From: Bugula neritina
Taxonomy: Eukaryota; Animalia; Bryozoa
DNA: 17,696 nt
Assembly (NCBI GenBank): GCA_964035545.1
Contig: CAXIUT010000026.1
Coordinates: forward strand, 1 to 17,696
Direction: 5' to 3'
Positions 1 through 17,696 of this stretch are shown one piece after another (the first letter of the stretch is position 1; each line of letters begins with the position of its first letter). The notes under the pieces were generated by a model. It did not search any database, had not been told where the DNA came from, and worked only from the letters and a program-made list of their open reading frames with translations. A program made the position numbers and the translations under genes.

Positions 1-87
1 CCCAACCCCAACCCCAACCCCAACCCCAACCCCAACCCCAACCCCAACCCCAACCCCAACCCCAACCCCAACCCCAACCCCAACCCC
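1..87 (+). repeat. Left telomere, (CCCCAA)n
   Basis: Uninterrupted CCCCAA hexamers from base 1 (starting CCCAA) to 87; the Tetrahymena-type C4A2 ciliate telomere repeat. Confidence 0.98.
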
Positions 88-147
88 TTAATAAAGTGTT
101 ATTATTAAATATGGTTATTTATAGCTACAAATTTGATATTTAGAAAA

Positions 148-1508
148 TCATGGAACCTGAATACGTTGCTTTGCCTTATCTGCTTCCACTAAAAAATCAA
201 TATCGAAATGTCCTTCGTCAGCTTTACTCTTTGGCCACCTCATCAACAACAACTCCTCTTTTTTCATCAATAATCTCCCCTCTTTCTCATTCCTCAATAC
301 CAAAAATGGAAAACTTATCTTCCTACTTAAAACCTCTCTTTCTTCTATCTTCCTACTTAAAACCTCTCTTTCTTCTATCTTCCTACTTAAAACCTCTCTT
401 TCTTCTATCTTCCTACTTAAAACCTCTCTTTCTTCTATCTTCCTACTTAAAACCTCTCTTTCTTCTATCTCCTACATACTCTTCATTGTCTACTAGATAC
501 TGTTATGTCCCTCTCCATTCTCTGTTGATAGTCCCTTTTCTTTATTATTTACTGGTTATTGGCTTTCCTATTCCTTTCTTTTTTAGGCAATAGGCTTATG
601 GCTTGAAGATAACTTATTGAAAATATTTATTTTAATTTATAGGTTTTGAAGGAGTTATTTTTTAGCTAGAAGTTCTTTTCTCTTTTTAATAAGTTATTTA
701 GGCATTCTTCTATAGGTAGTTCCATCAAAACTCAAATGGTTATCTCTATCTCCAACTATTTTCCTTCCATCTTTTCTGAGTACTCCAAGAGCAATCAAAA
801 CATTCAAAGCATCATAAACTCTTCTTTTAATGTTTTGTTCGTCTTTTCCCTAAATATCAACAAAACTACTTATTGATCTAACTCTTGCTAGCTGTTTAAC
901 TAATCCACCAAACGGTTAGCTACCTACTTATAAGATGCTGACTTCATATTCAATACTATTTCATATGCTCTTTGAGATAACTTTCGAAGACCTTTTTCTT
1001 TAGGCCGAGATTTTTTAACTTATGGTCCAAAGACTCCCATCCTGCTAGAACTATTAGTGTTGTGCAAATGTTTCTCTACTACACTAAACCCTCCCTGGTT
1101 CTTGTCTCTGTTGTTGGTGCTATCCCTTTGAGGAGTTTTGAACAATTCATCTTCCTACTTTCGAGATGCAAAAACAGCGATTTCCTCTTAAGTGAGAGGC
1201 TTATTGCAGAAAAGGTGATTAAGTTCAAAATGATCGAAGGAAGGAGTGAATAGATAGGTGTTTCCTAGTGGTTGGCAGGGCTCTTCTTTTTTTAGAGGAT
1301 GTGATTTATGTTTTGGAGCCAAATAAAGTTTAGGTTATTTGATGAGTTTAGCTTATTCTTGTGTTTCTTGTTGCAGTAAAAAGTTAGGATGCGGATGATT
1401 AGAAGGGTTGGGTATGAGTACTTTGAGTTAAGTAGGTGAACTTTATGCCATCGTAACGAACTATAATAAAATCTATTTTGGCTCACTTTGGAGCCGTTGT
1501 GATCCCAT
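148..1508 (-). CDS. E2F/DP-family transcription factor (DP-like); one 20-nt intron (850-869); start uncertain (ATG 1508 or 1451)
   Basis: With TAR=Glu and the intron removed, it reads KGLRKLSQRAYEIVLNMKSASYKEVANRLVDEL...KDEQNIKRRVYDALNVLIALGVLRK, matching the DP winged-helix and DEF box (RRVYDALNVL). Later KISFPFLV resembles the DP C-terminal domain. TGA at 148-150. Confidence 0.88.
316..470 (-). repeat. 30-bp coding tandem repeat, ~5 copies, encoding (IEEREVLSRK)n in the DP-like gene
   Basis: Plus-strand unit TATCTTCCTACTTAAAACCTCTCTTTCTTC repeated perfectly and in frame. Confidence 0.95.
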
Positions 1509-1718
1509 TTCTATTAGCCAAACAATCACTACAGGTCACCACCATCCATCTTATCAGATAAATCAATCAATCTTAAGACTACTATCAATACCACAATTAT
1601 ATCAATAATATTTATTGCTAACTACCTCGTCTAATATCGAAATAGATAAAATCTATCTTTATATCATCTACTAGCTGATAGTATTGTCACTCAGATACTA
1701 TTAACAATTTAACAAATA

Positions 1719-3235
1719 ATGGAGATTCATACTCATGATTATGATAACTTTATGACTAAAGTTGTATCATAATTTATAGCTTATGGCAACAGTCTTCATA
1801 CAAATCGATAAACCATTCTATCTGGCAGGAGATACAGTCAACGGATGCGTCTTCCTCAACCTCTTTGACAACATGGCTGCCAGTGAAGTCCTCATCAAGT
1901 TTAAAGGATGGGAGTCAGTCAGATGGTTCGAATAAAGAATCGTCAACGAACAATAAAGACAAAATATCGCATCCAATCTCATCTTCCAAAACGTATCTTT
2001 CCCTCACTCAGATGTTCAAAATCAGAATGGATAGTTCAGACTCAGAAGATAGGCCAGGAGATGATTAAGGCTCTAAGTACTTTTATATCTATCTAGGTAT
2101 CAATACGTTATGGACAATGGTCTTCTTAAATAAATTACCAGATACTCAGGATAAAAAAAGATAGCTCGTTTCGACAACGTCCTTTACAACTTTGGAGGAA
2201 ACTTTATCCCTGCAGGCCAGTATTCTTTTCCCTTTTCTTTTAAAACTGGATAAAGTTTTCCAGCTTCCTTCATTGTATTTCCTTCTAACTCAGGATAAAT
2301 CTTCAGACGGAAGCAGAAGAGGTCGCATCAAATACGAAATGCAGGCTTTCGTTCGAGGTTTCAGTGACAGGCTCATTCTTCTCAGAACTAAACAAGAAAT
2401 AGTTATCAGATAGTCAGCTCCTATCAAGAATGATCAACAGCAAATGGAAGCTCATGTGACAAGTTGTTGTTGCATCGATCAAGGCACGACTCGCATCCAA
2501 TGCTATTTCTAAAAGAATGGATATGCTCCAGGAGAAGACGCCAAAATATATTGCAAATTAGATAACACTGAAGGAAAAAGCTAAGTAAATAGTGTAGATG
2601 TATCTCTTCTCAACTAAATCACATATTCTAGTTCATAGGGAAGAAAAAAAGTATTTTCCCATAACGTTTTCAAAAAATCTTTTTCAGGACTCGGAGTAGG
2701 ACAGCAAGGATAAAGATAAAATGTCGTTAAAATTCTAAACACTTCAGGAAATACTGGACCATAGAACATTAAACCTACAGCTAGAGGAACTCAGCTCCAC
2801 TCAGTTTATTTTCTAGTAGTTTAAGCTAGTCTTTCTGCCCCATGTACATGCTGTTCTGACTTACCAATCGTTAAGCAACCAGTTCTGATATTTCCTTTTA
2901 TTCCAGTTAACTATAACTGGAGTCCTCCTCCGAATTGGAGTCCCAAAGTAATGCCTCCCATGAACTTCCAAATGGGTCTGGGATCTCTAGGAGTAAATCC
3001 AATGAATGTTAACATGAACGTTAATATGGGAGTGCAGCCTAATCCGATGAACAATCAGATGAATCCTCTGAATGTGTCTCCAACGGTTGAGATGTCATCG
3101 AAAAACGTTCCTCCAACTACTCATATGCACGGAAATGGCTATGGTAATACCCAAATGAATGTTAATGTAGGAGGAATGGGAATATCAGTCTAAGCCAATT
3201 TAAACTAAGACAATTCCAACATGCGTCCTTTCTGA
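1719..3235 (+). CDS. Arrestin-fold protein (arrestin N and C domains, alpha-arrestin-like); introns 1761-1779 (less certain; alternative start 1783), 1993-2011, 2077-2096, 2275-2293
   Basis: Spliced translation gives VFIQIDKPFYLAGDTVNGCVFLNL...LIKFKGWESVRW, IPAGQYSFPFSFKTGESFPASF...GRIKYEMQAFV and CCCIDQGTTRIQCYFEKNGYAPGEDAKIYCKLDN. Spliced length is 1440 nt, ending TGA at 3233-3235. Confidence 0.85.
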
Positions 3236-3588
3236 TCATTCACATTTCATAAGAATAATATCTATTTATAGAATCATCTTTTAATACCAATCTATTTCAT
3301 CAACCTTTAAAACACTTTTTATTCAATAACTATCGACATGCAAGGTCACCTTCATCACGACTGTCATATTTCTTGACTTATTCCTTTTAAAAAGATTTCG
3401 AGTAAAAAAATTGACCTTTTCTGTCTGATTATATCCTTTTCAATATTTAACTAAACTAACTTTAAACACAATACAAAGATACATATATAATCTAGATTAC
3501 TGATTTTATTTTGATAGTTATTATTTAATTCTATATGAATTAGCAGCGTTCTTAATTAGCATATTTTATTTATTTACTTGCCTTAAAA

Positions 3589-5925
3589 ATGGGACAGTCC
3601 ATGAGCTCTCCCAGCTAAACCAACACTCGCGACCAAAATTCTAGACTCCTTACCAGATCTCTACAACGTTCTTCCAAAAAATCAACCTATCAAGATAAAA
3701 AAAGTCGCTTCAGTTCCAGCAAAATACAAAATAATTCCAGAAATTCACTCAACTAAGCTCCATAAAACACCTTAAACAATGCTATTGGCAATGGAGAACT
3801 ATTTTTAATGAGCAGACACGAAGAAGCTACGAATAGTATCCGAGAATTAAATCAATTAAAAGGTCAGAAGTAGACTTTAGGGATACAGGGAGAGCTTAAA
3901 TCTCCTAATTTTAAGTCAGTAAATGAGCCACAAGCGTAGTATGGGCTAAACTTATGGACTGCGGTAAATAATAGTAAAGATATTTCACATAATTAGACTC
4001 ACAATCAAGACGTAACTATAAGTTTCAGCAAGGCCAAAAATACTAACAACAATATCTTTCACTAAGAACAATCAGAAAGAAAGTCAACTCTAAAACAAAT
4101 CCTTGAAGAATAAAATTAGTACCAGGTAAATTTAAAAGATTAAAAAACCTATCTCGACAAAGAAATAGATCACATCATATCCTTGAAATCAATTTATTCA
4201 TAAAGCTATAATACGCCCGGACAAAGCACTTAAAATACCCCAAAAAAGAACAAAGAAAGCTCAAAAAAACTAAAAATAAATAAATAAAGCTAAATAAAAA
4301 TAGAAAATAAAAATATTAATAAGAAATAACCATCAAAAATATCAAATAAAAGTAATATCAATCACGTAAATAAGAAAAGTATCAATAATATAAGTAATAT
4401 CAATAATATTAATCATAAAAGTAATATCAATAATATCAATAATGTAAATAATATGAAGAGTATCAATAATGTAAATAATATGAAGAGTATCAATAATGTA
4501 AATAATATGAATGATAACAATGATAACAATGATAACAATGATAACAATGATAGCAGTGATGGCAGTGAGTAAATAAAAGAAGATATATTATAGATTAAAT
4601 AAGAAATAAATGTGTAATAGAAAATGACTCCATGTTTTAATGATTATGATACTGATTTTCAAAAACAGAATAATAATACTAAAGATATCCCTAAACTATC
4701 AAATAAAATGCAAGAGCTTAAACAGAAAATTGCTAGTAGAGCATCACTACTTAAATAAAAAGGAAATATCAGTAAATACTCTTTAAGAGACCTTTCCACC
4801 AGCTTCAGAAAACTACAAAACAGTCTATCTCTATAAAAAAGTATCAACAGTAAAAACAATACCAGACTACAAAAAATAAAATAAAAACTATCAAGGACAC
4901 ATCTAGCTGACGGAAAAACTACCACTTCAGGTCTTAGATTGTATAAAGAACTCAAAAACTAAAATAATCATTTTAAAAATGGAATCACTCTAAAACATAA
5001 TCAATAATAACATAAAAAAGACAAGTTAATATCAAATAAAGCTAAATAAGATCAGTTAATATCAAATAAAACTAAATAAGACCAATTAATATAAAATAAA
5101 ACTGGAAAAGATCAAATAGAGTCAAATAAAACTAGAAAAGACCAATTAATGTCAAATAAAGCTAAAGAACTAACTGATAATTAATTGAAAAATAAATATA
5201 GTAAAAATGTAGATTCTCTATTTAAATAAAAAAAATAACATAAAGTCAAAGATATTACACCTGTTACATTGTTAAAAAAGACTAAATTTCAATAAGATAA
5301 AATAAAAAATAAAATATCATCTACCTAACACAATGATAAAGATATTATATCTTTTACAGAAATGGTCAAAAAAGAACACTTCAACAATAAAAAAAAGAAA
5401 AAATAAGGATCTACGATAGACTACATCCTCTAGTTCAGTCAAGTTGTAGAAGCATAAGCTTCTCCTCATAGTTAGACTCTCTTTGCCAGTACAAAGCTCA
5501 ACCAACTTTCAGGAAAATAATATGAACTTGAAGAACCTGAAAATAAAAAATCAAGTCATAAAAAATAATCTTTTGATAAAAAAAAAGACAAACAAATCAA
5601 ACATCTCAGAAAAATAGCATAATAACTTAATAGAAGATAAAATAAGCCCAAAAAACCAAAGTAGAATATGAGCAATGAGACTTATGAAGCATCGATTCGA
5701 AATAAAACAATGCAAGATAAATCATTGTAGCACTAGCAACAAGCAATAAACAGAACAACTGCCAATTACCAAGAGGCTATAGGACATTTCGAATAGTATA
5801 TGCTTGTTGAGGCTCTTGGAAAGCCTAAAGAAACAACAGCTAAGAGTAGGCCAGAGAAAAGAAAGTCCAAAAGTCTAGAACGTCCCGCCATAACTGGTGT
5901 CAAAAATAGACTTCTTATCTTCTGA
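3589..5925 (+). CDS. Hypothetical 778-aa Asn/Lys/Ser-rich low-complexity protein with N-myristoylation-type start (MGQSMS)
   Basis: A single 2337-nt frame from ATG 3589 to TGA 5923-5925 with no internal TGA under TAR=Glu. Internal repeats keep the frame. No recognisable domain. Confidence 0.8.
4351..4560 (+). repeat. Asn-rich coding repeats (27-bp KSINNVNNM units, 9-bp AATGATAAC units)
   Basis: AAGAGTATCAATAATGTAAATAATATG is repeated, followed by (AATGATAAC)x4, all in frame. Confidence 0.8.
5020..5170 (+). repeat. Degenerate 30-bp coding repeat, ~5 copies (DQLISNKxKE-like)
   Basis: GAC/GAT CAA/CAG TTA ATA TCA AAT AAA ... recurs at 30-bp period, in frame. Confidence 0.75.
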
Positions 5926-6040
5926 TTGTACTTAGTTTTCTTATTATCTTTTGATTGACAATAATTATTGATTATCTTCTAAATACTGTTTTAGTTTATC
6001 GAATCAAAGTGATATTATGTAAATGCAAGTAGAATATCAA

Positions 6041-6908
6041 TCAATTAGATTTGTGGTGTCCAACTTCGTCGCAAAGAATAAGCGAACAGATAAGTGGGTG
6101 AGTTTTAGAGGGCAAATAGTTGTCTGAAGTCAAAATAGTCAAAGTAGGATTTCTTTGTTCTCTTTCATCAACGTTTTCTACCATGATTTCTTCTTCTATC
6201 GAAAGCTACTCCAGCTCATCGCTATCTTCTTTCTTCATCTTGTTCCTACGAATCTTCTGAACAACCTTTTTGACATCTTACTTGGATCCAAGTTTTCCAA
6301 ATCTTGAGTCTATCTTCATTCCTTTGATGATTTCCTTCACCTCATGCTCAGAAGATACTATTTCTGGTAGACTGGCTATAAAATCTTCCAGTAGTTGGGT
6401 CTTGACAGGATCATCTTCAGGTTTAGAAATAGAAATTTGTGACTCTTTTTCGATAGCAGAAAGAGTGGGATGGTACTAGTGTTTATCTTCTATTTATTCC
6501 TATTGATCATATGGTGTTTAGGGATCATAACTTGGATCTTAGACTGTGTCCATAGATTTTTTATTGGAACATCCCTTGCGTTTGATATTCCTTAGAAGGT
6601 GTCTGAGTGGTTGAAAAAGTACTTTGCATCTCTACGAAACTCTCTGTGTTCAAAGATGTTCTTGTTCTGTTCGTTTCGAATTTTGTGGAAATCATACATG
6701 TTGAGCTGTCTCACAAAAGAACTAAAGTTTCGATGTCTAAAGTAGATAGGAAGAGTCTCCTGTTCAAATCTATCCACGTCCAGGATTGTAAAGTTGGTTC
6801 CCTCCTAGTTCCATCCAGCGATATCTGAGTAGCAATCGTTCTAAATGACAGAAAATGTACCTCAAGGATTTCAAAGGTTTTGGAGATGAAGATAGAAGGA
6901 CCTACCAT
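6041..6908 (-). CDS. HSF: Heat-shock-factor-type DNA-binding protein; 20-nt introns at 6841-6860 and 6603-6622; start may be further upstream (e.g. ATG 6998)
   Basis: Spliced translation PSIFISKTFEILENDCYSDIAGWNEEGTNFTILDVDRFEQETLPIYFRHRNFSSFVRQLNMYDFHK...FEHREFRRDAKHLLRNIKRK is a complete HSF DNA-binding domain. TGA at 6041-6043. Confidence 0.92.
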
Positions 6909-7321
6909 CTTCTCTCTACGCCAGCGGCCTCGACGCAAGTCCTACTTCCATTCCGGGAGACATGGTCGACTGATCACTTTTTTCTATTCCTCACACATTT
7001 CTAAAGCTTCGATTTATATATATTTAAATCTCTCACAAATATCATTTAATTTCTATCTTTGTCTCGACCCGTCCACACAGCTAATACCCAAAATAAACTC
7101 TTTCCACAGCTAGGACCTGTTCCTTGACTCCAATTTCGATTACAATTTTTCAAAAATAAAGGAAAACATCCGAATACCACTGTTCTTGAATATATTTATT
7201 AGATAAAATGGTTTTGATTCCAACTAAATCATTATCTTTAACTACAAAATGTCATTGTTGACATATTAGTCATTGTCGAATATTTAGAGTCATTTGATAT
7301 TTAAAGAGGTATTACTATAAA

Positions 7322-7416
7322 AAGAGGTAAATTAAGTATCAAGAGGTAAATTAAGTATCAAGAGGTAAATTAAGTATCAAGAGGTAAATTAAGTATCAAG
7401 AGGTAAATTAAGTATC
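7322..7416. repeat. Intergenic 19-bp perfect tandem repeat x5 (AAGAGGTAAATTAAGTATC)
   Basis: Five identical adjacent copies starting at 7322, 7341, 7360, 7379 and 7398, with no spacers. Confidence 0.95.
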
Positions 7417-7490
7417 AAAGTGAAATATTTTTCCATTAAGCTATCTATCTATAAAAGAATTAGTAGTATAATTATGTAAATCATGCAGGT

Positions 7491-8222
7491 TCAGTTCAGA
7501 AGAGCTTATAAACAGTTATTCTCTTCCATCTATAACAACTACAACGGATCAATAAAATATGACCTCGGCAGTGTTACATCTTCAACCTAGTTCACTGTCT
7601 CTCTCTAACTCTACACCTCTTTTGTCCTCTCAATCTGGCCTGTCTGTAGTTTATTCCAACTAAACAACTCAGAATTGCATTATACTCCGTTAGCTCTCAT
7701 ATCGAGAACCACCAAATCAGCATCTCCTGATCCATAGTGATTTATTCTTAACTCCTTAAGAATCTTTGAAAAACAACCATGTTTTTTCTACATTTTTTGA
7801 TGATGACTTCTACACTGTTCTGCCTCTCTTGTAGCCACAAACTTCTACATTGTCTTAAATATCTTATCCATCCTCCTTAACTGCTTATTAAAAAAGTGTT
7901 AAGCGTAAATTTACAAAAACCAATGATATCTTTTATTTTCCTCCAAAGTCCAGTGACCTCTTTGCACTCCTTCTCCAAGGGTTTTAGGTAAATCTCTCCT
8001 TTTCCTTTGCTTTTTATCTGAACTACTTGAGAGAGAAAGGCTTTTAGCTGGGGGACTTAAAGGTTAACAGGTTGCATGACTCAAAGGGTTGATTTAATCT
8101 TATTGACCTAATTCTGGAAGAATATCTTCAAAGGAAGGTTTTCTATATCTCTAAGGTTAAAGAAAGATAGGAAGGGAAGAAAGTGATTCCATTGCAAGAC
8201 AGTCATCGTCTATGTAAATCAT
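7491..8222 (-). CDS. Myb/SANT-like (SHAQKY-class, SHHQK variant) transcription factor, no intron needed
   Basis: Reads GHWTLEENKRYHWFLEIY...IFKTMEKFVATREAEQCRSHHQKMEK. ATG at 8222 (alternative 8192), TGA at 7491-7493. Confidence 0.85.
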
Positions 8223-8550
8223 GCTATTAAACTTAATTTGCAAAAGCTAAATAGTGATGAGTATTAGTAGAGAGTAAAGGGAATAAATTCCGACCGGGAA
8301 TATCTCAATTTATCTTCATAATCAATTAATCAGACACTTATTTGTCAATACAATTTGATGATTTCAAAAATAGTTTTAGGTATTCTGATAAAACTATTTA
8401 TTATATACCTGTGAATATTATTCAAGGTATTTTAATCAAAATAACATCGTTTCTCAACTCAATGCTTTAAAATGAATGAGATTTTATCTACTAAGTTAGT
8501 TATTTTAAGATAATAAATTTTAAATATAGAGGAGTTATTGCTTGGATTTA

Positions 8551-9552
8551 TCACAATATAAGAATGCAACTTGGAGTCTTTAAACCTAGTTCAGTCTATA
8601 ATAAGACTTTCTCACTTGTTATCCTGTACTTCTCCACATTATCACTCTTCTGACCACCCACATACAAATATCCCCCAGCACTCACAGCAAAATGACGAGG
8701 ACAACTCCCCACCTTAAATGAACAGTTTAACTACAACTTGTCCTCTTCTTTCACATCAAATATCATGATCTTGTCGTCACCTCGAAGACCTATATAAACC
8801 CGATCCTGCATATAAGCCACCTCTGAAGGAAAATTTGATTCGTTAGAAGATATCTTGTAAGCTGTTATATGTTCGAGATTTCCTGATCGATAGCTAAAAA
8901 CTCTCAAAGTGTTGTCAAGTTAACAACTGACATAGAGAAGCTTGCTTCCAGGTTTTCCTTTACAGATAGTTCTTGGTCCTGAACCTTCCATCTTAATCGA
9001 CTTTTATTTGCTGAACTCAACCTTTTAAGGAGTCATCTCATAATAGTAGAGGATATCTGTCCCCAAGTCAGCTATGAAAAGGACTTGACCATCTTCAGAA
9101 AAGACTGAACTATGAGGATGAGGACTAGTTTGCCTATCAGCATTGACACTATTGCCCTAGTGTTTGATAAGAGAATGAACAGAAGTGGGCAGATGGTTTT
9201 CTAGTCTGCAAATAAGAACAGAAGCACTTGAGTAATTAGTAACCACAATGTATTTTCCAGAGTTGTCAATAGTGATATGACAAGGATCATCACCCATTGT
9301 AGATATTCTGGAAACAACTTAAAACTTTTAGTTTAGTGTCGACAAAACTCCTTTTTCATGTTCAGCAACGACATAGTAAAATCCATCATGCTTAGCTACG
9401 TATGAAGGATTAATATCAGTGAGAACAGCCGTTGCTGTTTTTTCAAGAGCATTGAAAAAAAATAAAGAAGGAGCCTATTTACCCTCAGAGTAACAACCAA
9501 TGAGGAGATTATTAGTCTCTGATTTCTCAAGTTCTTTTCCTGAACTCTCCAT
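8551..9552 (-). CDS. pgl: Lactonase, 7-bladed beta-propeller (6-phosphogluconolactonase Pgl/YbhE, cycloisomerase-2 family), 333 aa, intronless
   Basis: Family motifs LIGCYS, NPSYV, GDDPCHITID...VTNYSS, RQTSPHPHS, ADLGTD, GSGPR, YVSCELDNT, RGDD, PRHF and C-terminal PSCIL. A 1002-nt frame from ATG to TGA. Confidence 0.88.
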
Positions 9553-9692
9553 CCCTTGTCTGCAATAAATGTTGATTTAAATTATAACAAACCATCAATG
9601 GTAATCAATAATAGTCAATCCAATAGTCAATTTATTATTTAGGAATAATCAGTCCATAGTCAATCAAATATAGAATAATAGTCAATTAAACA

Positions 9693-11182
9693 TCAGTTTT
9701 ATGTGGGTTCATGCAGACCAACTCTCTCTTCTTATACTCGCTTCATGGTCGGTTGTCCCTTCAATTTTTAGACTAATTAACTTCGAGACTGACCTTTGGA
9801 CTCGACCATAAACATGTACATATAGATCAGACTTAAGAGAGAACAAACTCCATAGAAGAGAAATACCTTTCCTATTCCAAATGTTTTAATCATGATCTAG
9901 GAACATAAAGAGACCAGAATAGTCATAACCCAGTTGACATTTTGAGTAAATGATATATTTTCCATAATTTAAGCAATATAGAGGAAAGTAATAGGTCCCA
10001 GAGAAAGACTGAACCCGATGATATGCAAAAATATGAGTCCGATAACTATTTTTTAGCTATGAAAGATGAGAGAGTCAGAAAGATAGGCCAAGATAAGACT
10101 AGAAGACATGACAGAAGCTCCAAAAAGCATGAGACTCCTCCTTCCATAAATATTAATCATAAAGCCACTGATAAAGGTTATTACTACTTGCAAAAGACCT
10201 AAATAGTATGTATTAATTAGAGCTTGTTCCTCATCAACAATATGCTAAAATATTTGTTTCGCATAGAATATGATAGCATTGATTCCAGACAACTGATTAG
10301 CAACCGCCAACACTAGACCCATTTTGACCACATCTTTAGAAGCTCGAGAAGTCAACATGTCCAAATACATCCATAATCCTTCCTTCTACTCACTCACAAA
10401 TAATACCATTTATTCATTTTTACGATTCTCAAAAGAAGAACAAGAAAACTGTCTTATCTTAACTAACTCGTCCACAGAACCATCTTCATAAAAGAGTTCC
10501 ACATACTACTCGAGATAAGTGTTTTCTTTGTGTTTATAGTGTTTTTATAGAGCATCGAATCTACTTAGAAGTAAAATACTTAAAAAAGAGAAGACAAATG
10601 GTTCTCATCAGGCAGAAAAAAGCCGGAAACAAGATGTACTGCGTCCAAGTAAAAGAAGCAATCATGCTGAATCGGTAATTAGTTACCCAAGTCGGTAGGC
10701 AACAGATATTCCAATGGTGATCATAAGTTGGTTAAAAGATCCCAAAAAGCCAGTCATTTCTGGAGGAGAAATAGAAACCAAGTAGGCTGGAATAACTGTT
10801 CCATTGGTTCCCAGATAAATACCCAGTAAAAATCGAGTTATGTAGAGAGTCATGAGGTCAATATTACATGCTTGAAAGCTAATGATGAGGATAGCTATTA
10901 AGTCTAAGAAGATCATAGCCTTTCGTTCGCCAGTAGCATTGGTGAGAGGCTGAATAAGAAAAGAACCTACATGTTTGATGGCTTACCAAGAAAGGCTCCA
11001 ATAGGAAGAAGTGTGGTTATGATGGATAGTTGGTAGTCTTTTTCGTCAGCAGTTAGAGAATTAGACTTAGATATGACTTCTGACATCATTGACATAGCTA
11101 CCAACGAATAGCCAAAGACAAAAGATCCAAAAGCCACGAAAGCTGATACTATGATTAGGATGTGCTTATTTCGAACTATCAT
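9693..11182 (-). CDS. MFS sugar porter (GLUT-like); introns 10967-10986, 10667-10686, 10561-10579
   Basis: Motifs AFGSFVFGY, RFLLGIYLG...PAYLVSISPP..GFLGSFNQLMITIGI, NQLSGINAIIFYA, GRRSLML, GPITFLYIAEI and VESKG. Spliced length is 1431 nt. Confidence 0.9.
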
Positions 11183-11324
11183 TTAATATAAACGTGTTAA
11201 TCAAACAAAAAATACTATCTTAATCCTGAAATCTCTTTAAAAGAACTAAAATTCTTAAAGACAATTATTCGAAGGAAACAATCAGACTAGATTCATCGAT
11301 ACTTATTCGACACAGATAAAGTAA

Positions 11325-12205
11325 TCATTCAAGTCTGATTTATTCTCTAACAAAGCCATGCAGAAGAGATCCGAGTTGTCTGGCCATGGCTGCAAGTAGA
11401 CATGTTGTACGTACAAACCCTGTACGTACAATGTACGTACAAGTTTGTACAGTGTACGTACAATGTACGTACAATTTTGTACATTGTACGTACATGTACA
11501 AATGTACAAACTTTGATGTACGTACGTACAACATGTCTAGCTGCAAGTGCAACTCCATCATCAATGAGTCCGATGGGTCCAAGAATAACTTCAGGGAGTA
11601 GATCGAAAGGACTAAATAAATAGATAAGCAAAAGAACGAGGTGTTTTAATTTCGGACTGGCAAAAAGATAATTCAAACCAGTCGATGTAAATAAAATTGG
11701 TAAGTTTCTGATTGTATTACCAAATTCTTTTATACTCCTTAATATCTTTCTTAAGATAACTGTACGCTAGGTTATCTTGCAAACTTATAGTTATAACTAC
11801 TTATCGACTATTTTATCTTCTTTTGCTCCTAAGACCCAACTTCAAACCTTCTCAACAAAACTATCACCTATTTACGACAAGCCGGACAGTTTATGCGAGT
11901 ATCAGGATGGGCCTAGATATATTTTATTATGCAGTCGCCTAAATATTGCGATAAATACCACAAAAACAGTGATTACAAGTAGCTACTACTTCGTTATTGA
12001 TTAGCTATAGACAGATAAAGCACTAGCGATTGATAGGTTAAGAGCTAGAAGAGTACTATTGATCATGCTGAGCAGATAATTGATGAGAAAGAAAAGGAGT
12101 CAACAACTTAAGCAAGCCAAGAACTCCTGCCACACACAAACAGATAAAGACTAAGGAAAAAAGAAAAGCCAGACAAGCTAGGACTGTGACCAAGGTCGAT
12201 ATCAT
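11325..12205 (-). CDS. RNF170: RNF170-like C3HC4 RING E3 ubiquitin ligase (N-terminal TM, RING, C-terminal DUF1232); 20-nt introns 11939-11958 and 11746-11765; interrupted near its 3' end by a 151-nt insertion
   Basis: CFICLELINNEVVATCNHCFCGDC...INCPACR is the RING. YNYKF...PSI and YLFSPFDLLPEVILGPIGLIDD (DUF1232) follow. Removing the insertion plus one target duplication restores ...GVALAAMARQLGSLLHGFVREEIRLE-TGA (690 nt spliced). Confidence 0.85.
11397..11539. mobile_element. 143-bp non-autonomous TIR element (hAT-like MITE) or retained IES
   Basis: Perfect 18-bp terminal inverted repeats TAGACATGTTGTACGTAC. Flanked by direct repeat GCTGCAAG at 11389-11396 and 11540-11547. Interior is made of TGTACGTACA and TGTACA palindromes. 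Confidence 0.88.
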
Positions 12206-12266
12206 CAATATAATAACAATTATGACTGACAATTTGAATAGTTATTTATATTGTTGTTTGCTAGAA

Positions 12267-12399
12267 GTTGGGGTTGGGGTTGGGGTTGGGGTTGGGGTTG
12301 GGGTTGGGGTTGGGGTTGGGGTTGGGGTTGGGGTTGGGGTTGGGGTTGGGGGTTGGGGTTGGGGTTGGGGTTGGGGTTGGGGTTGGGGTTGGGGTTGGG
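12267..12399 (+). repeat. Internal telomeric tract (TTGGGG)n, the right telomere of the 1-12399 chromosome
   Basis: About 22 hexamers with the G-strand on +, one G5 variant near 12348-12352, ending ...TTGGG and followed by non-telomeric sequence. Confidence 0.95.
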
Positions 12400-14229
12400 C
12401 CTAAGATTAATAAGACATTTCTGATTCTGACAATTCTTACTCCTTTAGAACTTTTGTTTGTTTTATCAAATCTTTTTTCTTTCGATTAAACTTTGTTGTC
12501 TCTTCCTAGCTCTCACTCAAAAGACTTATCACTTACTTCTTCTCTCCCAACTCCCACCTATCACTCTATCTTACTCCTTACTCTTTATCCAAAACCTTTC
12601 CAACCAAATTCTTCATCTACACTATATCTTCTTAATCAATAGTCTTAGATATTTAAGATCGAATAAGTAGGTCTCTTATTTTCACCCAAACTTCTCCTTC
12701 ATTTTCATAATTTTTTTATATCTCTTCTTAAAATGACTCCCTTCCTTCTACCTAAAGTTGTTCCCTTTTTCCTACTTAAAGTTATTCCCTTCCTCCTACT
12801 TAAAGTTGTTCCCTTCCTCCTACTTAAAGTTGTTCCCTTCCTCCTACTTAAAGTTGTTCCCTTCCTCCTACTTAAAGTTGTTCCCTTCCTCCTACTTAAA
12901 GTTGTTCCCTTCCTCCTATTTTAAAGGCTCTATATAACTACTTTAGAAGGCTAATGAACTCTTTAGTGATGTTGGACTGCTATTTATATTGATTTGAAAG
13001 GCTATATTTGTCTGATAGAAGTTTAGCAACTGTTTTTACATTATTGAAATGAATGAAAAGATAAAATATTTATTTTTTAATAAATTTAGGTTAGTCATTA
13101 TAATGTATTTAAGTATGTTTATTATTTTTTTTATTTTTTTATTTTAGGTTTTTCTTTATTTTCAATACCATTTTCAAATAAATAACATAGATCTAATAAG
13201 AACCTATTTATATCTGAGTATCAATATCCAAATAGAATAATATACATCTTTTCATTATATCTGCTTACTATACACTCAACCAGCTAGTAAAGTCTTTGAA
13301 ATCAGATACAATCAAACTCTTATGGACCTTAGGAATGTTTCTAAACTTAAAGTTATCCATGACATAGGATTCTATTTGTCTGAATACTACTCTAAAGATA
13401 TATTCCAAGTAAGAAGAAAATATTTTTGAGTTTCTAAATTAATCTATAAGTACATATTATTCTTACAACTACCATTGAAATTCTTAAAGCCAAACCTGAT
13501 TTTTGAATTACATAACTCTTCTCCAATCTATTTAAGCCACTCCTTATCCTTAGGAATTTTAACTATTTTCTTTTTCAAAGAGGGTAAACCTTCTTCAAGC
13601 TTTGATTCCTTATACTCTTAAAACTTTGCTTCTCTGAGGAGAGTTTTTATTGAACCTATAGTATTTTTATTATCTAGGTCAGGCACAAATAGTTTAAAAA
13701 GCTCCTACTTCAAAGGTTAAAACCTTTCAGCCACTTTAAGTATCCCAGAAGCCATACTCTAGTAACTTTAGATAGTATTTTAGAGGCTTTTTTCCAGATA
13801 TATTGTGAAGTTAGGATTTTTTTATTTGTAAAGATAGGTGAAAGATGATAGATATATGTCTGTAAGCTAAGTTTTTTTGTTTACTTACTCACTAAAGTCT
13901 TTGAAATTCAATTTTCTTTCATTTAGCTTTGACAGATGGAGGATTCTTCTTGACAATACCTGGAACCTTTCATTCAACATCTTTTTCAATTTTATTTCAG
14001 TCTCATTATGAAGATTTGCTAATTTTCTAAGATAGTCATGACTAGAGATATGTGTGCTAGCCTCATAGTTTTTTATGTTTTTGAAGAAGTCATGACCCTG
14101 ATGGATGGGAATAGTTTAGTGTTCTCCTCGGTAGTGAAATTGTTGTTAAGGGTCAGCTGAGTTGAAAAGCTGATGATTGTTTTAGATGCAGTTGAAGTTG
14201 AAGCAGATCATATCATACTTTTCCATCAT
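12400..14229 (-). CDS. Hypothetical protein, 3'-truncated at the telomere junction; probable 23-nt intron 13444-13466
   Basis: Starts ATG ATG GAA at 14229. About 600 TGA-free codons after removing GTAAGA...TTATAG. The frame runs into the telomeric tract without a stop. No recognisable domain. Confidence 0.7.
12739..12918 (-). repeat. 24-bp coding tandem repeat, ~7.5 copies, encoding (LEVGGREQ)n
   Basis: Plus-strand unit CCCTTCCTCCTACTTAAAGTTGTT with slightly diverged end copies. Confidence 0.93.
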
Positions 14230-14444
14230 AAAAGCATTATATTATCCTCCAAAAAACTCAAACTTAAATTTTAGATATCAGCTCCTATTCTTTGAAGATT
14301 AAAGAATATCTTTGAGAATTATAATTTTGATATATATCATTTATCTTTTGATTGATTATTTATAAGAGATTATGAATTAAAGTCATATCTAAATAATATT
14401 GAGCTTTATTAATACTTATGATTCACTTTAAATGATATCTGAAA

Positions 14445-15709
14445 TCAAGATTTAGGCTTCTTTAAGTTAATCTTCAAAGTATCAGCCACCTTTCTGATAA
14501 ACTCAAGAGTTTCACAATACTTTTCTCGAGGTACAGTAGTAGTTCCCAACACACAAATTGCTAAATCTTTCGTCATAAAACCATTCTATACGCACTAAAT
14601 AATGCTTCCTTAGAGAGTTTCACAAAAATGCTTCAGTTCTTCATTATTATCAAGTTTAGCCCGATGAAGAAGTCCTTTTGTCCAGGCATAAATGCTCGCA
14701 ATAGAGTTAGTAGATGTTTATTTTCCTTGCTGGTACATGCGGTAGTGTCTAGTGACTGTACCATGAGCAGCTTCAGCTTCAACTGAACCATCAGGGGCAA
14801 GTAGTACAGAAGTCATCAGTCCCAAAGATCCATAACCTATCTTAATATGAATTTACCTTGAGCCAAGCAATCACTTTGAACATCGCCATCATAATTTTTA
14901 CAAGCCCAAACAAATCCTCCGTCCGATTTAATCATCTGAGCAACCATGTCATCAATCAATCTATGTTCATACCATAACTTTTTCTCTTAAAACTCTTTCC
15001 GATAGAACTAGTTATAGATCTTTTCAAAAGTATCCTTGAAACGACCGTCATACTTCTTCATAATCGTGTTCTTAGTTGTGAAGTAAAGAGGATAGTTTCG
15101 AGCTAATGCGTATTTGAAACAACTATGAGCAAAGCAATCAATGCTTTCGTCAGTATTGTACATACCCATACCTACTCCTCCATGACCTGTAAACTTATAA
15201 ACTTCCATCTTTTCCTCTGAGCCATCATCTCCCTTGAATGTCATTTAAAAAGTTCCAGGCTTATCGACAACAAAATCAGTGGCTTTATACTGGTCTCCAA
15301 AGGCATGTCTTCCAATGATGATAGGTTTTTTCCAACCTGGAACCAACTTAGGAATGTTCTTGATGATTATAGGCTCCCTGAAAACAGTTCCATTTAAAAT
15401 GTTTCTGATGGTTCCATTGGGACTCTTCCACATCTTCTTCAACTTGAATTCTTCAACACGAGCCTCATCAGGAGTAATTGTAGCGCACTTAATGCCTACT
15501 TTACATTTTTTGATAGCCTCAGCAGCCTCAATAGTAACTTTATCATCTGTTTTGTCTCTATATTCCATTCCGAGATCGAAGTAGAGAATTTCTAGATCAA
15601 GGAAAGGCAGGATGAGTTCATCTTTGATGGCCTTCCAGATGATCCTGGTCATTTAATCTCCATCTAGTTCAGCAACAGGGTTATTTACTTTTATTTTACC
15701 TCCTTACAT
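14445..15709 (-). CDS. IDH: NADP-dependent isocitrate dehydrogenase (414 aa, no obvious presequence, probably cytosolic); one 20-nt intron 14837-14856
   Basis: Motifs [96 protein letters not shown] and MTKDLA. Spliced length is 1245 nt. Confidence 0.97.
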
Positions 15710-16232
15710 AAATATATCAAAAGATATGTGTATAGTAATAAATAAAAGCCTTTCATTTTTTTCTCATTTCTGACGAAGTTTTCAATATTTTTTAATATTG
15801 ATTTATTATTTATTTTTAGAATATAAATATGATTTTATGATAATCTTTGTTATTTTAACCTTATAATATCAATTTCAATAACAGATTCAAAGAATTAAAA
15901 ACTACCAATTTAATGGATAACACCTTTACTATTCACTTTTCCTCCTCTCAAATATCTATACATGGTTTTCACCAATAAAACATTCAAATATAGACCTCTT
16001 TTAGTCCTGAATATTTTGTACTAATCGAACTTTTATGGAAAGAAATATGAATATTTTTATTTTAACTAAATTATTCGATATTTTTGACCTTATTTTCAAT
16101 CAGATAGAAGTCTTTGAAGATACTTTCAGGTTTGAAAGAGAGTATTCAGGTCAGTTGACTCCCAAAGAGGAAGAAGTAAGTTTATCCATATAATACAATT
16201 AATAAATTAGGAGCTGAACCAAATTGATAATC

Positions 16233-17498
16233 ATGAACTAAAAGCACCTTATAGACCGTAATTGCTGGAGTCACTACTCTCGAAGCTTTTCCAACTTACA
16301 TCTAGACATCAAGCCCCTCGATCTCAAAGTCTTCTGGCAGAGAAAGTCTTTCTTTGACCCTCCTCCAGAACTAGCAGAATGTTATGCAGCTAGAAACCAT
16401 ATAGCAGGAGCAGATGTGCCCATCATTGAAGTGCTACACTCAAGCAAGAGATGGCTTCTTCTCCAGAGTCCCAGATGTAGTGCAACTTTCTTCTAAAAAG
16501 TCAACAAAGGGCAATTAGGTAATCCCTATGAATACCTTTTAAGAACTTTTAAAAGTTTTTATGTTTTAGTGAGAACTTACGGCTACTTTATACCTACAGC
16601 CAAGATGATTTTTGTAAGTAAAAGGGAAATCTGTGTCTGGATTAGTTCCAATATCTTTTAAAACCACCCTGAGTATCTTCTAAGAAATGATTACAGAGGA
16701 TAACAGTAATTCATTCAAGGGTTTCTCAAAATGTTGGAATAATAAATGAAAGAATGGTAAAGAGTATAAAATATTCACTCAGTCGAGGATATCATCAAAC
16801 TCCTTGAATGGAGAAGTCAATTGAGAAGAGGGAGCATGACTGCTATCCAAGCCAGTAAAGAAGTCTTTGCCAGACCAGATTCGATGGTTTCTTTTGAATT
16901 GAGCTAGTTTTAACTGTAAAATAAGGGTATTAAAGGATGTAAATCAGTAAACAATATAAAGAAGGGGATCAGTTTAGACGGAATATCAGCCTAGATGAGT
17001 AGTAGTTATACAATAGTAGATGAAGAAAAGAAGGTAATAAATAGAAAGGTAGATCAAAGGATATTATATGATTCAAAAGACATGAAGAATTCAATTTATG
17101 ATGAGATAAAGCCAGCAAAAGTAATACATGAAGTAAGAATGACAAAAAAGAAGTTCAATCTCATGTCGACCTCAAGTACTCTTTAGAAATTTACCTAAAA
17201 GCTAAAGATAACAGTAAATAAAAAGAAAACATTAAAATTGATATAACAGAGTGATAAGAATAGCTACAGAGATGAGAGAAACAAAGAAAGCAATTTAGAA
17301 AGATATTAATAGTAGAATATAAAAGAGAAACCATAGAGGAATAAGAATATGCATCGATCTGAGCCAATAAATATAGCTAATGAGCTAGAAGACCTTTTCG
17401 AGGAAGACTAGAAGCACTAGTTGAAATTTGGTGTGGAAGGAAATAGATAGGAACTGTAGAAGATAGCATAGGAGATAGAATAAATTTTGATTTGGTGA
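16233..17498 (+). CDS. Hypothetical protein (>=421 aa); 5' end unresolved, may extend upstream through further introns
   Basis: A 1266-nt TGA-free frame from ATG 16233 to TGA 17496-17498, including track ORF 16995-17186. Coding-like sequence and a GTAAGT donor at ~16176 lie upstream. Confidence 0.65.
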
Positions 17499-17587
17499 CA
17501 TATGTTTATATATCACCTCAATATTTCAGTTATCACCAATAATAACAATAATAACTCATCATCTCATATCATAATATGAGAAGTCAA

Positions 17588-17696
17588 GGTTGGGGTTGGG
17601 GTTGGGGTTGGGGTTGGGGTTGGGGTTGGGGTTGGGGTTGGGGTTGGGGTTGGGGTTGGGGTTGGGGTTGGGGTTGGGGTTGGGGTTGGGGTTGGG
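17588..17696 (+). repeat. Right telomere, (TTGGGG)n
   Basis: Uninterrupted TTGGGG hexamers to the window end, ending ...TTGGG. Confidence 0.98.

What the first reader, a model, noticed from the sequence alone, without database searches (positions are those of the whole stretch)
11389..11547. Palindrome-packed hAT-like MITE (or retained IES) inside a coding exon of a somatic ciliate chromosome
Seen: a 143-bp element with perfect 18-bp TIRs (TAGACATGTTGTACGTAC) and an 8-bp duplicated target GCTGCAAG. The interior has six TGTACGTACA palindromes (11406, 11421, 11432, 11453, 11464, 11485), one TGTACGTACGTACA (11517) and four TGTACA. Element plus one duplication is 151 nt and frameshifts the RNF170-like gene; precise removal restores the C-terminus. 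Known: 8-bp TSDs, TAG/CAG-starting TIRs and repeated subterminal motifs characterise hAT elements, and ciliate macronuclei are normally purged of transposons. Inference: either a young mobile family that escapes programmed elimination, or a transposon-derived IES excised through 8-bp direct repeats and caught unexcised. Either would be notable in a peritrich-code ciliate. Paramecium-style TA-IES excision would leave +10 nt, so it would not repair the gene.
Basis: partly seen in the sequence, partly recalled or inferred. Interest (0 to 1): 0.9.

Follow-up and report, generated by a model that had tools for sequence, protein, structure and literature searches.

The report
Polymorphic MITE insertion in ciliate gene
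A 143-bp miniature transposon sits in the last exon of a RING/DUF1232 (RNF170-like) gene on a small somatic chromosome of a ciliate that travels with the sequenced host, but most molecules in the same libraries lack it, so it is a young, still-segregating insertion and not a fixed feature.

Summary
There is a 143-bp element (11397-11539) with perfect 18-bp TIRs and an 8-bp duplication, GCTGCAAG. All six TGTACGTACA palindromes of the 17.7-kb window lie inside it.

It sits just after the DUF1232 domain of a RING+DUF1232 gene on the minus strand. It replaces a conserved 20-residue tail with an unrelated 69-residue one.

The new result comes from contigs of two runs of the likely source study. Both hold the filled form and a precise empty site that skips 151 nt and keeps one GCTGCAAG. 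The filled share is about 41% in one run and about 16% in the other. The assembly therefore shows the minority form.

The empty form encodes the tail shared by homologues and by a syntenic orthologous locus in a related ciliate.

Two further partial copies, with the same termini but other flanks, appear in run contigs. None is in this assembly or in JGI metagenomes.

No matching transposase was found, so hAT membership is unproven.

Best reading: a young non-autonomous cut-and-paste transposon that is polymorphic among alleles or cells. Partial retention of a MITE-derived IES, excised through its 8-bp repeats, is not excluded (about 0.2). Moderately interesting, not categorically new.

The parts
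11389..11396 (.). Left copy of the 8-bp target-site duplication, GCTGCAAG
   Evidence: The empty-site contigs keep exactly one copy (joint 11388->11540, 9 letters fit either side).
11397..11539 (.). 143-bp non-autonomous TIR element (MITE). It has no coding capacity of its own.
   Evidence: It is present in filled-form contigs of runs X1 (depth 11.3) and X2 (depths 22.8 and 16.8), and absent from the empty-form contigs (depths 16 and 107.4).
11397..11414 (+). Left terminal inverted repeat, 18 nt, starting TAGACATG
   Evidence: The exact 18-mer occurs only here in the 216-Mb assembly.
11522..11539 (-). Right terminal inverted repeat, the perfect complement of the left one
   Evidence: A second family copy in run contigs ends at the same ...GTCTA boundary (X1 record 4).
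11406..11530 (.). Internal array of palindromes: 6 x TGTACGTACA, 1 x TGTACGTACGTACA and 4 x TGTACA. It includes a 32-nt unit repeated at 11421 and 11453. These are candidate transposase-binding subterminal repeats (inference).
   Evidence: (families D1-D3)
11540..11547 (.). Right copy of the 8-bp target-site duplication
11542..11640 (-). DUF1232 domain of the interrupted gene. The insertion lies immediately after it.
   Evidence: Pfam PF06803, E 1.1e-8, 35.1 bits. Residues 43-75 of window:11539-11766:- match profile positions 5-36 of 37.
11325..11388 (-). Conserved C-terminal tail (MARQLGSLLHGFVREEIRLE) and its TGA stop. It is in frame only in the empty form.
   Evidence: The tail aligns with those of P0001, P0002, P0003, P0007 and P0073.
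11325..12240 (-). RNF170-like gene core: transmembrane segment, C3HC4 RING split by a 20-nt intron (11939-11958), then DUF1232. The reading frame stays open upstream to about 13594, through GGREQLEV, PQ and TP repeats, so the true start is uncertain.
   Evidence: Translations with table 30. Full-length RING+DUF1232 homologues are P0016 and P0057.
1..17696 (.). Whole telomere-to-telomere somatic chromosome: C4A2 repeats at 1-~87 and G4T2 repeats at ~17590-17696
   Evidence: The window is the whole of contig C35.

Best explanation
The element is a young, non-autonomous cut-and-paste DNA transposon (a MITE). It inserted into the last coding exon of a RING+DUF1232 (RNF170-like) gene of a UAR=Glu, C4A2-telomere ciliate that lives with the sequenced host.

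Insertion duplicated the 8-bp target GCTGCAAG. The palindromic TGTACGTACA repeats between the 18-bp TIRs are most likely binding sites for a transposase supplied in trans (inferred).

The insertion is not fixed. The same DNA libraries hold the occupied site and, more abundantly, the unoccupied site with one GCTGCAAG. I read that unoccupied site as the ancestral, functional allele.

The occupied allele keeps the DUF1232 domain but swaps the conserved 20-residue tail for 69 unrelated residues. It is probably a damaged allele, tolerated because the polyploid macronucleus or the cell population also carries the intact one.

The assembler happened to write the minority form into the contig.

Shown: the anatomy, the polymorphism, the precise empty site, the conservation of the empty-form tail, and related copies at other flanks. 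Inferred: that transposition is the mechanism, that the two forms are alleles or cell lineages and not developmental products, and the superfamily.
For: (1) Anatomy: perfect 18-bp TIRs, an 8-bp duplication, 143 bp and no ORF of its own.

(2) Polymorphism. In X1 the flanking contigs have depth 28.4 and 31.4. They split into a 202-nt filled contig (11.3) and a 51-nt contig that joins 11388 to 11540 with no extra letters (16). In X2 the flanks are at 165-169, the filled contigs at 22.8 and 16.8, and the empty contig at 107.4. The filled and empty depths together roughly account for the flank depth, closely in X1 (27.3 against 28-31) and less so in X2 (about 130 against 165-169), so they are two forms of one locus.

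(3) The empty form encodes ...RQLGSLLHGFVREE. This aligns with the tails of the five closest homologues. A syntenic orthologous locus (DUF1232 gene followed by a sugar-transporter gene) in JGI contigs L043-L047 has no insert.

(4) Family. A 9.4-kb contig in X1, also seen in X2, holds a diverged copy. It has 3 mismatches in 33 nt and one extra T in the TIR, and it ends at the same ...GTCTA, followed by a different flank. That flank is absent from the host assembly. Its X2/X1 depth ratio of 6.7 is close to the ciliate locus's 5.6. A 151-nt contig in X4, from another study, has TAGACATG next to element-interior sequence behind yet another flank.

(5) It is not an artefact: the filled form is present in two separate runs.
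Against: - The exact TIR occurs nowhere else in the 216-Mb assembly, and only as four chance hits in JGI metagenomes. The family rests on two partial copies seen as loose ends of contigs.
- No autonomous partner or matching transposase was found.
- No SNPs accompany the two forms over 1.4 kb (table 3). That would fit a developmental or somatic origin as well as a very recent allele. However, Logan contigs drop variants, so this weighs little.
- The filled share differs between samples (41% against about 16%). Population polymorphism, macronuclear assortment and variable IES retention all predict this.
- No germline (micronuclear) sequence is available.
Confidence: 0.58

Rival explanations
1. 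It is a MITE-derived internal eliminated sequence (a 'MITIES'). It is present at this site in the germline of all cells and is cut out during macronuclear development by recombination or excision across its own 8-bp duplication. Removal is incomplete, so 16-41% of somatic molecules retain it.
For: - The empty junction is exact and keeps one repeat, as pointer-type IES excision would leave it.
- No linked SNPs were seen over 1.4 kb.
- The filled share varies between samples.
- Blepharisma shows that MITEs can double as IESs, and that excision is 'a continuum' with partial retention in somatic DNA (PMC9942856).
Against: - The exact empty site is also simply the pre-insertion allele.
- Retention of 16-41% is far above the residual level reported for somatic-enriched DNA in Blepharisma (scores <=0.02; PMC9942856).
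- The excisases known in the same class (Paramecium, Tetrahymena) work at TA or TTAA ends, or imprecisely. The observed junction is not the TA product, which would leave +10 nt.
- There are no germline data for this ciliate, and I found no paper on peritrich IESs in the library.
Confidence: 0.22
2. It is a somatic transposition event. The MITE is mobile in the macronucleus and inserted into some of the many copies of this chromosome in a clonal line. Amitotic assortment then carried it to intermediate frequency.
For: - The flanks of the two forms are identical.
- The element lies on a telomere-capped somatic chromosome.
- One ciliate-coded MULE transposase-domain ORF lies on small contig C251. 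It has 2 TAG and 2 TAA codons inside the match, so a DDE transposase gene may be encoded somatically.
Against: - The insertion is seen in two different samples of the study (S1, S2). That needs either a shared clone or a germline origin.
- The C251 hit is weak (29.4 bits) and has no copy of this TIR nearby (one search lists no hit on C251).
- MULEs usually make 9-11-bp duplications (from memory).
- No expression data are available.
Confidence: 0.08
3. The filled form is germline (micronuclear) DNA contaminating the library and merged into a somatic contig by the assembler. Somatic molecules would all be empty.
For: The empty form is the majority. Assemblers can collapse near-identical germline and somatic reads.
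Against: - A share of 41% in X1 and about 16% in X2 is far more than a diploid micronucleus should contribute beside a polyploid macronucleus (general ciliate biology).
- Flank depth equals filled plus empty depth, with no extra germline-only sequence joining on. Within 10800-12200 the 151-nt skip was the only joint, and every loose end there belongs to another copy or, by my reading, to a Hi-C ligation junction.
Confidence: 0.05
4. The element behaves as a new spliceosomal intron (introner-like), so the occupied allele still makes a near-normal protein.
For: Twenty-two GT...AG pairs inside or around the element would restore the frame. The best of them removes 136 nt and adds only five residues, RHVVP.
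Against: - The two introns I checked in this window are each 20 nt long.
- Peritrichs are reported to have a narrow intron-length distribution (PMC13685798).
- No RNA run holds this locus, so nothing supports splicing.
Confidence: 0.05

Closest known systems
MITIES / BogoMITE of Blepharisma stoltei (MITEs that are also IESs; PMC9942856)
   Same: Short TIR+TSD non-autonomous elements, some palindromic and about 150 bp, in a ciliate genome. They show recent proliferation. [quoted passage not shown]
   Different: BogoMITE belongs to the Pogo/Tigger (Tc1/mariner) group and is germline-limited, with residual retention <=0.02. Here the duplication is 8 bp and the termini are TAGAC...GTCTA. The element is found in 16-41% of molecules of a somatic chromosome. 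Germline status is unknown.
hAT-superfamily MITEs
   Same: An 8-bp target-site duplication, short (18-bp) TIRs starting TAG, and reiterated subterminal motifs.
   Different: Position 5 of the terminus is C, not the conserved G. The target fits only half of the nTnnnnAn preference. Both consensuses are cited from memory. No hAT transposase lies in any ciliate contig; all 14 PF05699 hits are on host chromosomes.
Paramecium TA-bounded IESs and mobile IES families (PMC3464196)
   Same: Transposon-derived short insertions inside coding exons of a ciliate of the same class. They are tolerated because the soma can be rid of them.
   Different: Those are bounded by TA and excised to leave one TA. Here that would leave +10 nt, and the observed junction instead keeps one 8-bp repeat.
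Tetrahymena exonic IESs excised precisely by TPB1/TPB6/LIA5 (PMC5238731, PMC5766162)
   Same: Precise, transposon-like removal of elements that interrupt genes.
   Different: Those have piggyBac-like TTAA ends and are fully removed. No piggyBac-domain gene was seen in the ciliate contigs of this partial assembly, and the ends here are not TTAA.

Membership tests
MITE (non-autonomous class II DNA transposon) | Terminal inverted repeats | tested here: met
   18/18 perfect, at 11397-11414 and 11522-11539. Shuffles give at most 15 nt.
MITE (non-autonomous class II DNA transposon) | Flanking target-site duplication, with a single copy at the unoccupied site | tested here: met
   GCTGCAAG lies on both sides. 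The empty-site contigs in X1 and X2 keep one copy.
MITE (non-autonomous class II DNA transposon) | Small size with no transposase gene | tested here: met
   143 bp. The only ORFs are read-through of the host gene or of the repeats.
MITE (non-autonomous class II DNA transposon) | Several copies at different loci | tested here: inconclusive
   Two further partial copies with the same termini and other flanks appear in run contigs. None is in the assembly or in JGI metagenomes. The ciliate part of the assembly is incomplete.
MITE (non-autonomous class II DNA transposon) | An autonomous partner with the same termini | tested here: not met
   No second TIR pair is present anywhere in G000. No hAT, Merlin or piggyBac domain lies on ciliate contigs. 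The one MULE domain, on C251, has no such TIR nearby. The germline genome is not available, so absence is not shown.
hAT superfamily | 8-bp target-site duplication | tested here: met
hAT superfamily | Terminal consensus 5'-YARNG (cited from memory) | tested here: not met
   The terminus is TAGAC, with C at position 5.
hAT superfamily | hAT transposase (DDE plus the hAT dimerisation domain) mobilising it | tested here: inconclusive
   PF05699 gives 14 hits, all on host contigs C1-C7 and none on small ciliate contigs. The host contigs carry no copy of this TIR above the control rate.
Ciliate internal eliminated sequence (IES) | Present in germline DNA and removed from somatic DNA during development | not testable with these tools
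   There is no micronuclear sequence. The big contigs C1-C8 are host, not ciliate germline. The element is in 16-41% of molecules.
Ciliate internal eliminated sequence (IES) | Boundary rule of the class Oligohymenophorea: a TA retained (Paramecium) or TTAA ends (Tetrahymena exonic IESs) | tested here: not met
   The junction joins 11388 to 11540 and keeps GCTGCAAG. No TA is left between two repeats.
RNF170-like E3 ligase (RING + DUF1232) | C3HC4 RING followed by a C-terminal DUF1232 membrane domain | tested here: met
   The RING motif is read in the table-30 translation. DUF1232 matches at E 1.1e-8. Homologues P0016 and P0057 have the same architecture.
Spliceosomal intron / introner | GT...AG ends, a length typical for the genome, and spliced RNA | tested here: inconclusive
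   Frame-restoring GT...AG pairs exist. Their lengths of 43-142 nt contrast with the 20-nt introns seen here. No RNA run holds the locus.

The most novel reading that the evidence does not exclude
The element is a transposon-derived IES of a peritrich-code ciliate. It would be removed precisely through its own 8-bp target-site duplication, a pointer-like rule unlike the TA or TTAA rules of Paramecium and Tetrahymena. It would have been caught here at 16-41% retention on a mature somatic chromosome. That would give a first view of how genome editing works in this lineage, and of a newly arrived MITE being converted into an IES.
Probability: 0.2. Interest if true: 0.75.

Novelty: new member of a known kind. 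Interest (0 to 1): 0.42.

Why it matters
If the simple reading holds, this is direct evidence of a recently active DNA-transposon family in a ciliate with the UAR=Glu code. No mobile elements or germline data for such ciliates turned up in the literature I could search.

It also shows that a host genome assembly has frozen a minority, gene-damaging allele of a cobiont into its reference. That is a caution for anyone annotating this gene.

The locus is also a ready-made assay. One PCR across 11389-11547 on single cells, before and after conjugation, would tell whether this lineage treats a new exon insertion as an allele or edits it out.

Tried and rejected
- **Germline copy in the big contigs.** BLAST of 10300-12700 against the whole assembly found only C35. 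C1-C8 are therefore host and hold no micronuclear copy.
- **Host origin or host-to-ciliate transfer.** The near-matches to the TIR and to TGTACGTACA on C1-C8 are GTAC-rich mini- and microsatellites without TIRs, at or near the control rate. For the same reason I do not read the roughly 545x depth of interior words in run X4 as family copy number. It is probably host satellite.
- **JGI metagenome scan for the exact TIR.** It gave four hits of 46-57% GC with no second TIR and no palindromes, so these are chance.
- **Flanks of the two extra copies.** Neither is in the assembly.
- **Looking up the filled-form ORF in public assemblies.** It is not on record.
- **Word-indexed protein search.** It gave one relative only, P0073.
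- **Rfam.** Only hairpin-type hits, all well below their gathering scores (best 35 bits against 75).
- **PDB sequence search of the DUF1232 piece.** Nothing meaningful.
- **RNA evidence.** No RNA run holds the locus.
- **Artefact reading.** Rejected, because the filled form is present in two separate runs.

Full report
**What is there.**
The window is the whole of contig C35 of a 216-Mb, 321-contig assembly. It begins with C4A2 repeats and ends with G4T2 repeats. Many other small contigs of the assembly carry the same telomeres. The eight chromosome-sized contigs hold no copy of this locus. C35 is therefore a complete somatic chromosome of a ciliate that came along with the sequenced host.

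TGA is the only stop that gives sensible genes here. TAG and TAA sit where homologues have Glu: R-E-C-x-I-C in the RING and F-V-R-E-E in the tail.

**The observation.**
- The element is 143 bp, at 11397-11539.
- Its 18-bp TIRs are perfect.
- GCTGCAAG lies on both sides.
- The six TGTACGTACA, the one TGTACGTACGTACA and the four TGTACA are at the stated coordinates.

All TGTACGTACA and all GTACGTAC of the 17.7-kb window lie inside the element. The 18-nt inverted repeat exceeds the 11-15 nt seen in 30 shuffles. As single-stranded DNA the stretch folds at -52.5 kcal/mol, z = -10.

**The gene.**
On the minus strand lies a gene with three parts: a transmembrane segment, a C3HC4 RING split by a 20-nt intron, and a C-terminal DUF1232 domain. 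The DUF1232 match is PF06803, E 1.1e-8, covering profile positions 5-36 of 37.

The insertion falls immediately after that domain.
- The occupied form reads on through the element and ends 69 residues after the insertion point, in an unrelated sequence.
- Removing 151 nt gives the tail MARQLGSLLHGFVREEIRLE.

An exhaustive HMMER search of 1.84 billion representative proteins found 72 relatives. The closest ones carry ...(L/M)xRQ(V/L/F)(S/G)x(L/I)(L/V)xxF(V/I)RE at this position, which matches the empty-form tail.

One relative, P0073, lies in JGI contigs with the same gene order: the DUF1232 gene, then a sugar-transporter gene. Those contigs have 53-58% GC, so they come from a different species. 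They have no insert and none of the element's motifs. The insert-derived C-terminus is therefore not ancestral.

**The decisive result.**
The contigs of four public runs were laid on 10800-12200.

In X1 and X2, two samples of one study and probably the source of the assembly, the locus forms a bubble:

| Run | Flank depth | Filled form | Empty form |
|---|---|---|---|
| X1 | 28.4 and 31.4 | 11.3 (202-nt contig) | 16 (51-nt contig) |
| X2 | 165-169 | 22.8 and 16.8 | 107.4 |

The 51-nt empty contig in X1 joins 11388 directly to 11540, with no extra letters and 9 letters shared by both sides.

This leads to four conclusions.
- The occupied form is real, because two separate runs hold it.
- A precise unoccupied site also exists.
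- The unoccupied site is the majority, at about 59% in X1 and about 84% in X2.
- The assembly shows the minority form.

X2 also shows GATC|GATC junctions typical of Hi-C ligation, which explains some stray loose ends. X4 and X7 come from two other studies with other host labels. They hold pieces identical to this chromosome but do not cover the insertion site.

**Is it a family?**
Within the assembly the TIR is unique. Near-matches on host contigs are GTAC-rich satellites. JGI metagenomes give only four chance matches.

The run contigs do reveal relatives.
- A 9.4-kb contig in X1 (depth 13.5), also seen in X2 (depth 90.7), has a diverged right end. It carries 3 mismatches in 33 nt and one extra T in the TIR. 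It stops at the same ...GTCTA and continues into a different, AT-rich flank. That flank is not in the host assembly.
- A contig in X4 has TAGACATG next to element-interior sequence behind a third flank (one search shows this flank is not in the assembly either).

This is modest but real support for a dispersed family with conserved termini.

**Superfamily.**
An 8-bp duplication, short TIRs and subterminal repeats fit hAT. Against that, the terminus TAGAC lacks the conserved G at position 5 (consensus cited from memory).

No transposase could be tied to the element.
- hAT domains occur only on host chromosomes.
- Merlin-type domains are absent.
- piggyBac domains occur only on host contigs.
- One MULE domain with in-frame TAG and TAA codons lies on small contig C251, with none of this TIR nearby.

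hAT membership is therefore unproven.

**Mechanism.**
My best reading, at about 0.58, is a young MITE insertion segregating beside the ancestral empty allele. The segregation could be between alleles in the polyploid macronucleus or between cells of the population on the host. The perfect TIRs and duplication, the polymorphism and the conserved empty-form tail all fit this.

The main rival, at about 0.22, is a MITE-derived IES removed through its own 8-bp repeats and retained in 16-41% of molecules.
- In its favour, Blepharisma provides a precedent for MITEs that are IESs and for partial excision (PMC9942856).
- Against it, that level of retention is very high, and the junction does not follow the TA or TTAA rules of the related model ciliates.

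Three other readings are less likely.
- Somatic transposition: about 0.08.
- Micronuclear contamination: about 0.05.
- Rescue by splicing: about 0.05. Twenty-two frame-restoring GT...AG pairs exist, but the two introns checked here are 20 nt and there is no RNA.

No SNPs separate the two forms over 1.4 kb. Logan contigs drop variants, so this carries little weight.

**Verdict.**
The 'hAT' label is unproven, and the choice between 'retained IES' and 'escapes elimination' is still open. A simpler allele reading is the most probable.

This is a new member of a known kind and moderately interesting. I found no paper on peritrich germline genomes or IESs in the library, so the locus would be a convenient test case for that question.

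Noticed in passing
window 300-470: About five and a half tandem copies of a roughly 31-nt unit (cttcctacttaaaacctctctttcttctat) lie about 200 nt inside the left telomere, in a strongly C-skewed stretch.
   Followed up: no
window 12250-12960, minus strand: The reading frame upstream of the RING runs through coding repeats: about seven GGREQLEV units, then (PQ)n and (TP)n tracts, before the transmembrane segment. It is unclear whether this is one long RNF170-like protein or two genes in one open frame, which is easy when TGA is the only stop.
   Followed up: partly
G000:C251:9536-9796 (-): There is a MULE transposase-domain match (PF10551, 29.4 bits, above the cut-off) with 2 TAG and 2 TAA codons inside, on a small contig. 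It is apparently a ciliate-coded, somatically encoded MULE-type gene. I could not fetch it.
   Followed up: no
G000:C1:30462367, C3:28905230, C5:1593917: Three hAT dimerisation-domain hits have identical scores, each within an uninterrupted 563-aa open frame, on three host chromosomes. This looks like a recently active hAT transposon of the host. It is unrelated to the ciliate element.
   Followed up: no
G000:C10, C11, C14, C15 (e.g. C10:9694-9747, 10934-11011, 19627-19680): Several small contigs carry C4A2/G4T2 tracts internally as well as at their ends. This suggests either concatenated minichromosomes or alternative fragmentation sites in the assembly.
   Followed up: no
host contigs, e.g. 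L025 (C5:15518973-15519039), L027 (C7:15422272-15422436), C4:22818949-22820035: The host genome is rich in GTACGTAC-containing micro- and minisatellites. They mimic the interior of the ciliate element in word-based searches and inflate depth in read-laying.
   Followed up: partly
window 10828-12200 in runs X4 and X7: Pieces identical to this ciliate chromosome occur in runs of two other studies labelled with two other organisms. The same ciliate strain or species therefore recurs as a cobiont or contaminant across projects.
   Followed up: partly
window 11124 and 11368 (GATC sites), run X2: Loose ends ending in ...GATC, joined to window GATC sites, look like Hi-C ligation junctions. X2 is probably a Hi-C library, and its contig depths near GATC sites are distorted.
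   Followed up: no
L043-L047 (JGI metagenome contigs): A related ciliate with 53-58% GC (this window has about 34%) has a syntenic locus: the RING/DUF1232 gene, then sugar-transporter, lactonase and Yip1 genes. Gene order is conserved despite a very different base composition.
   Followed up: partly
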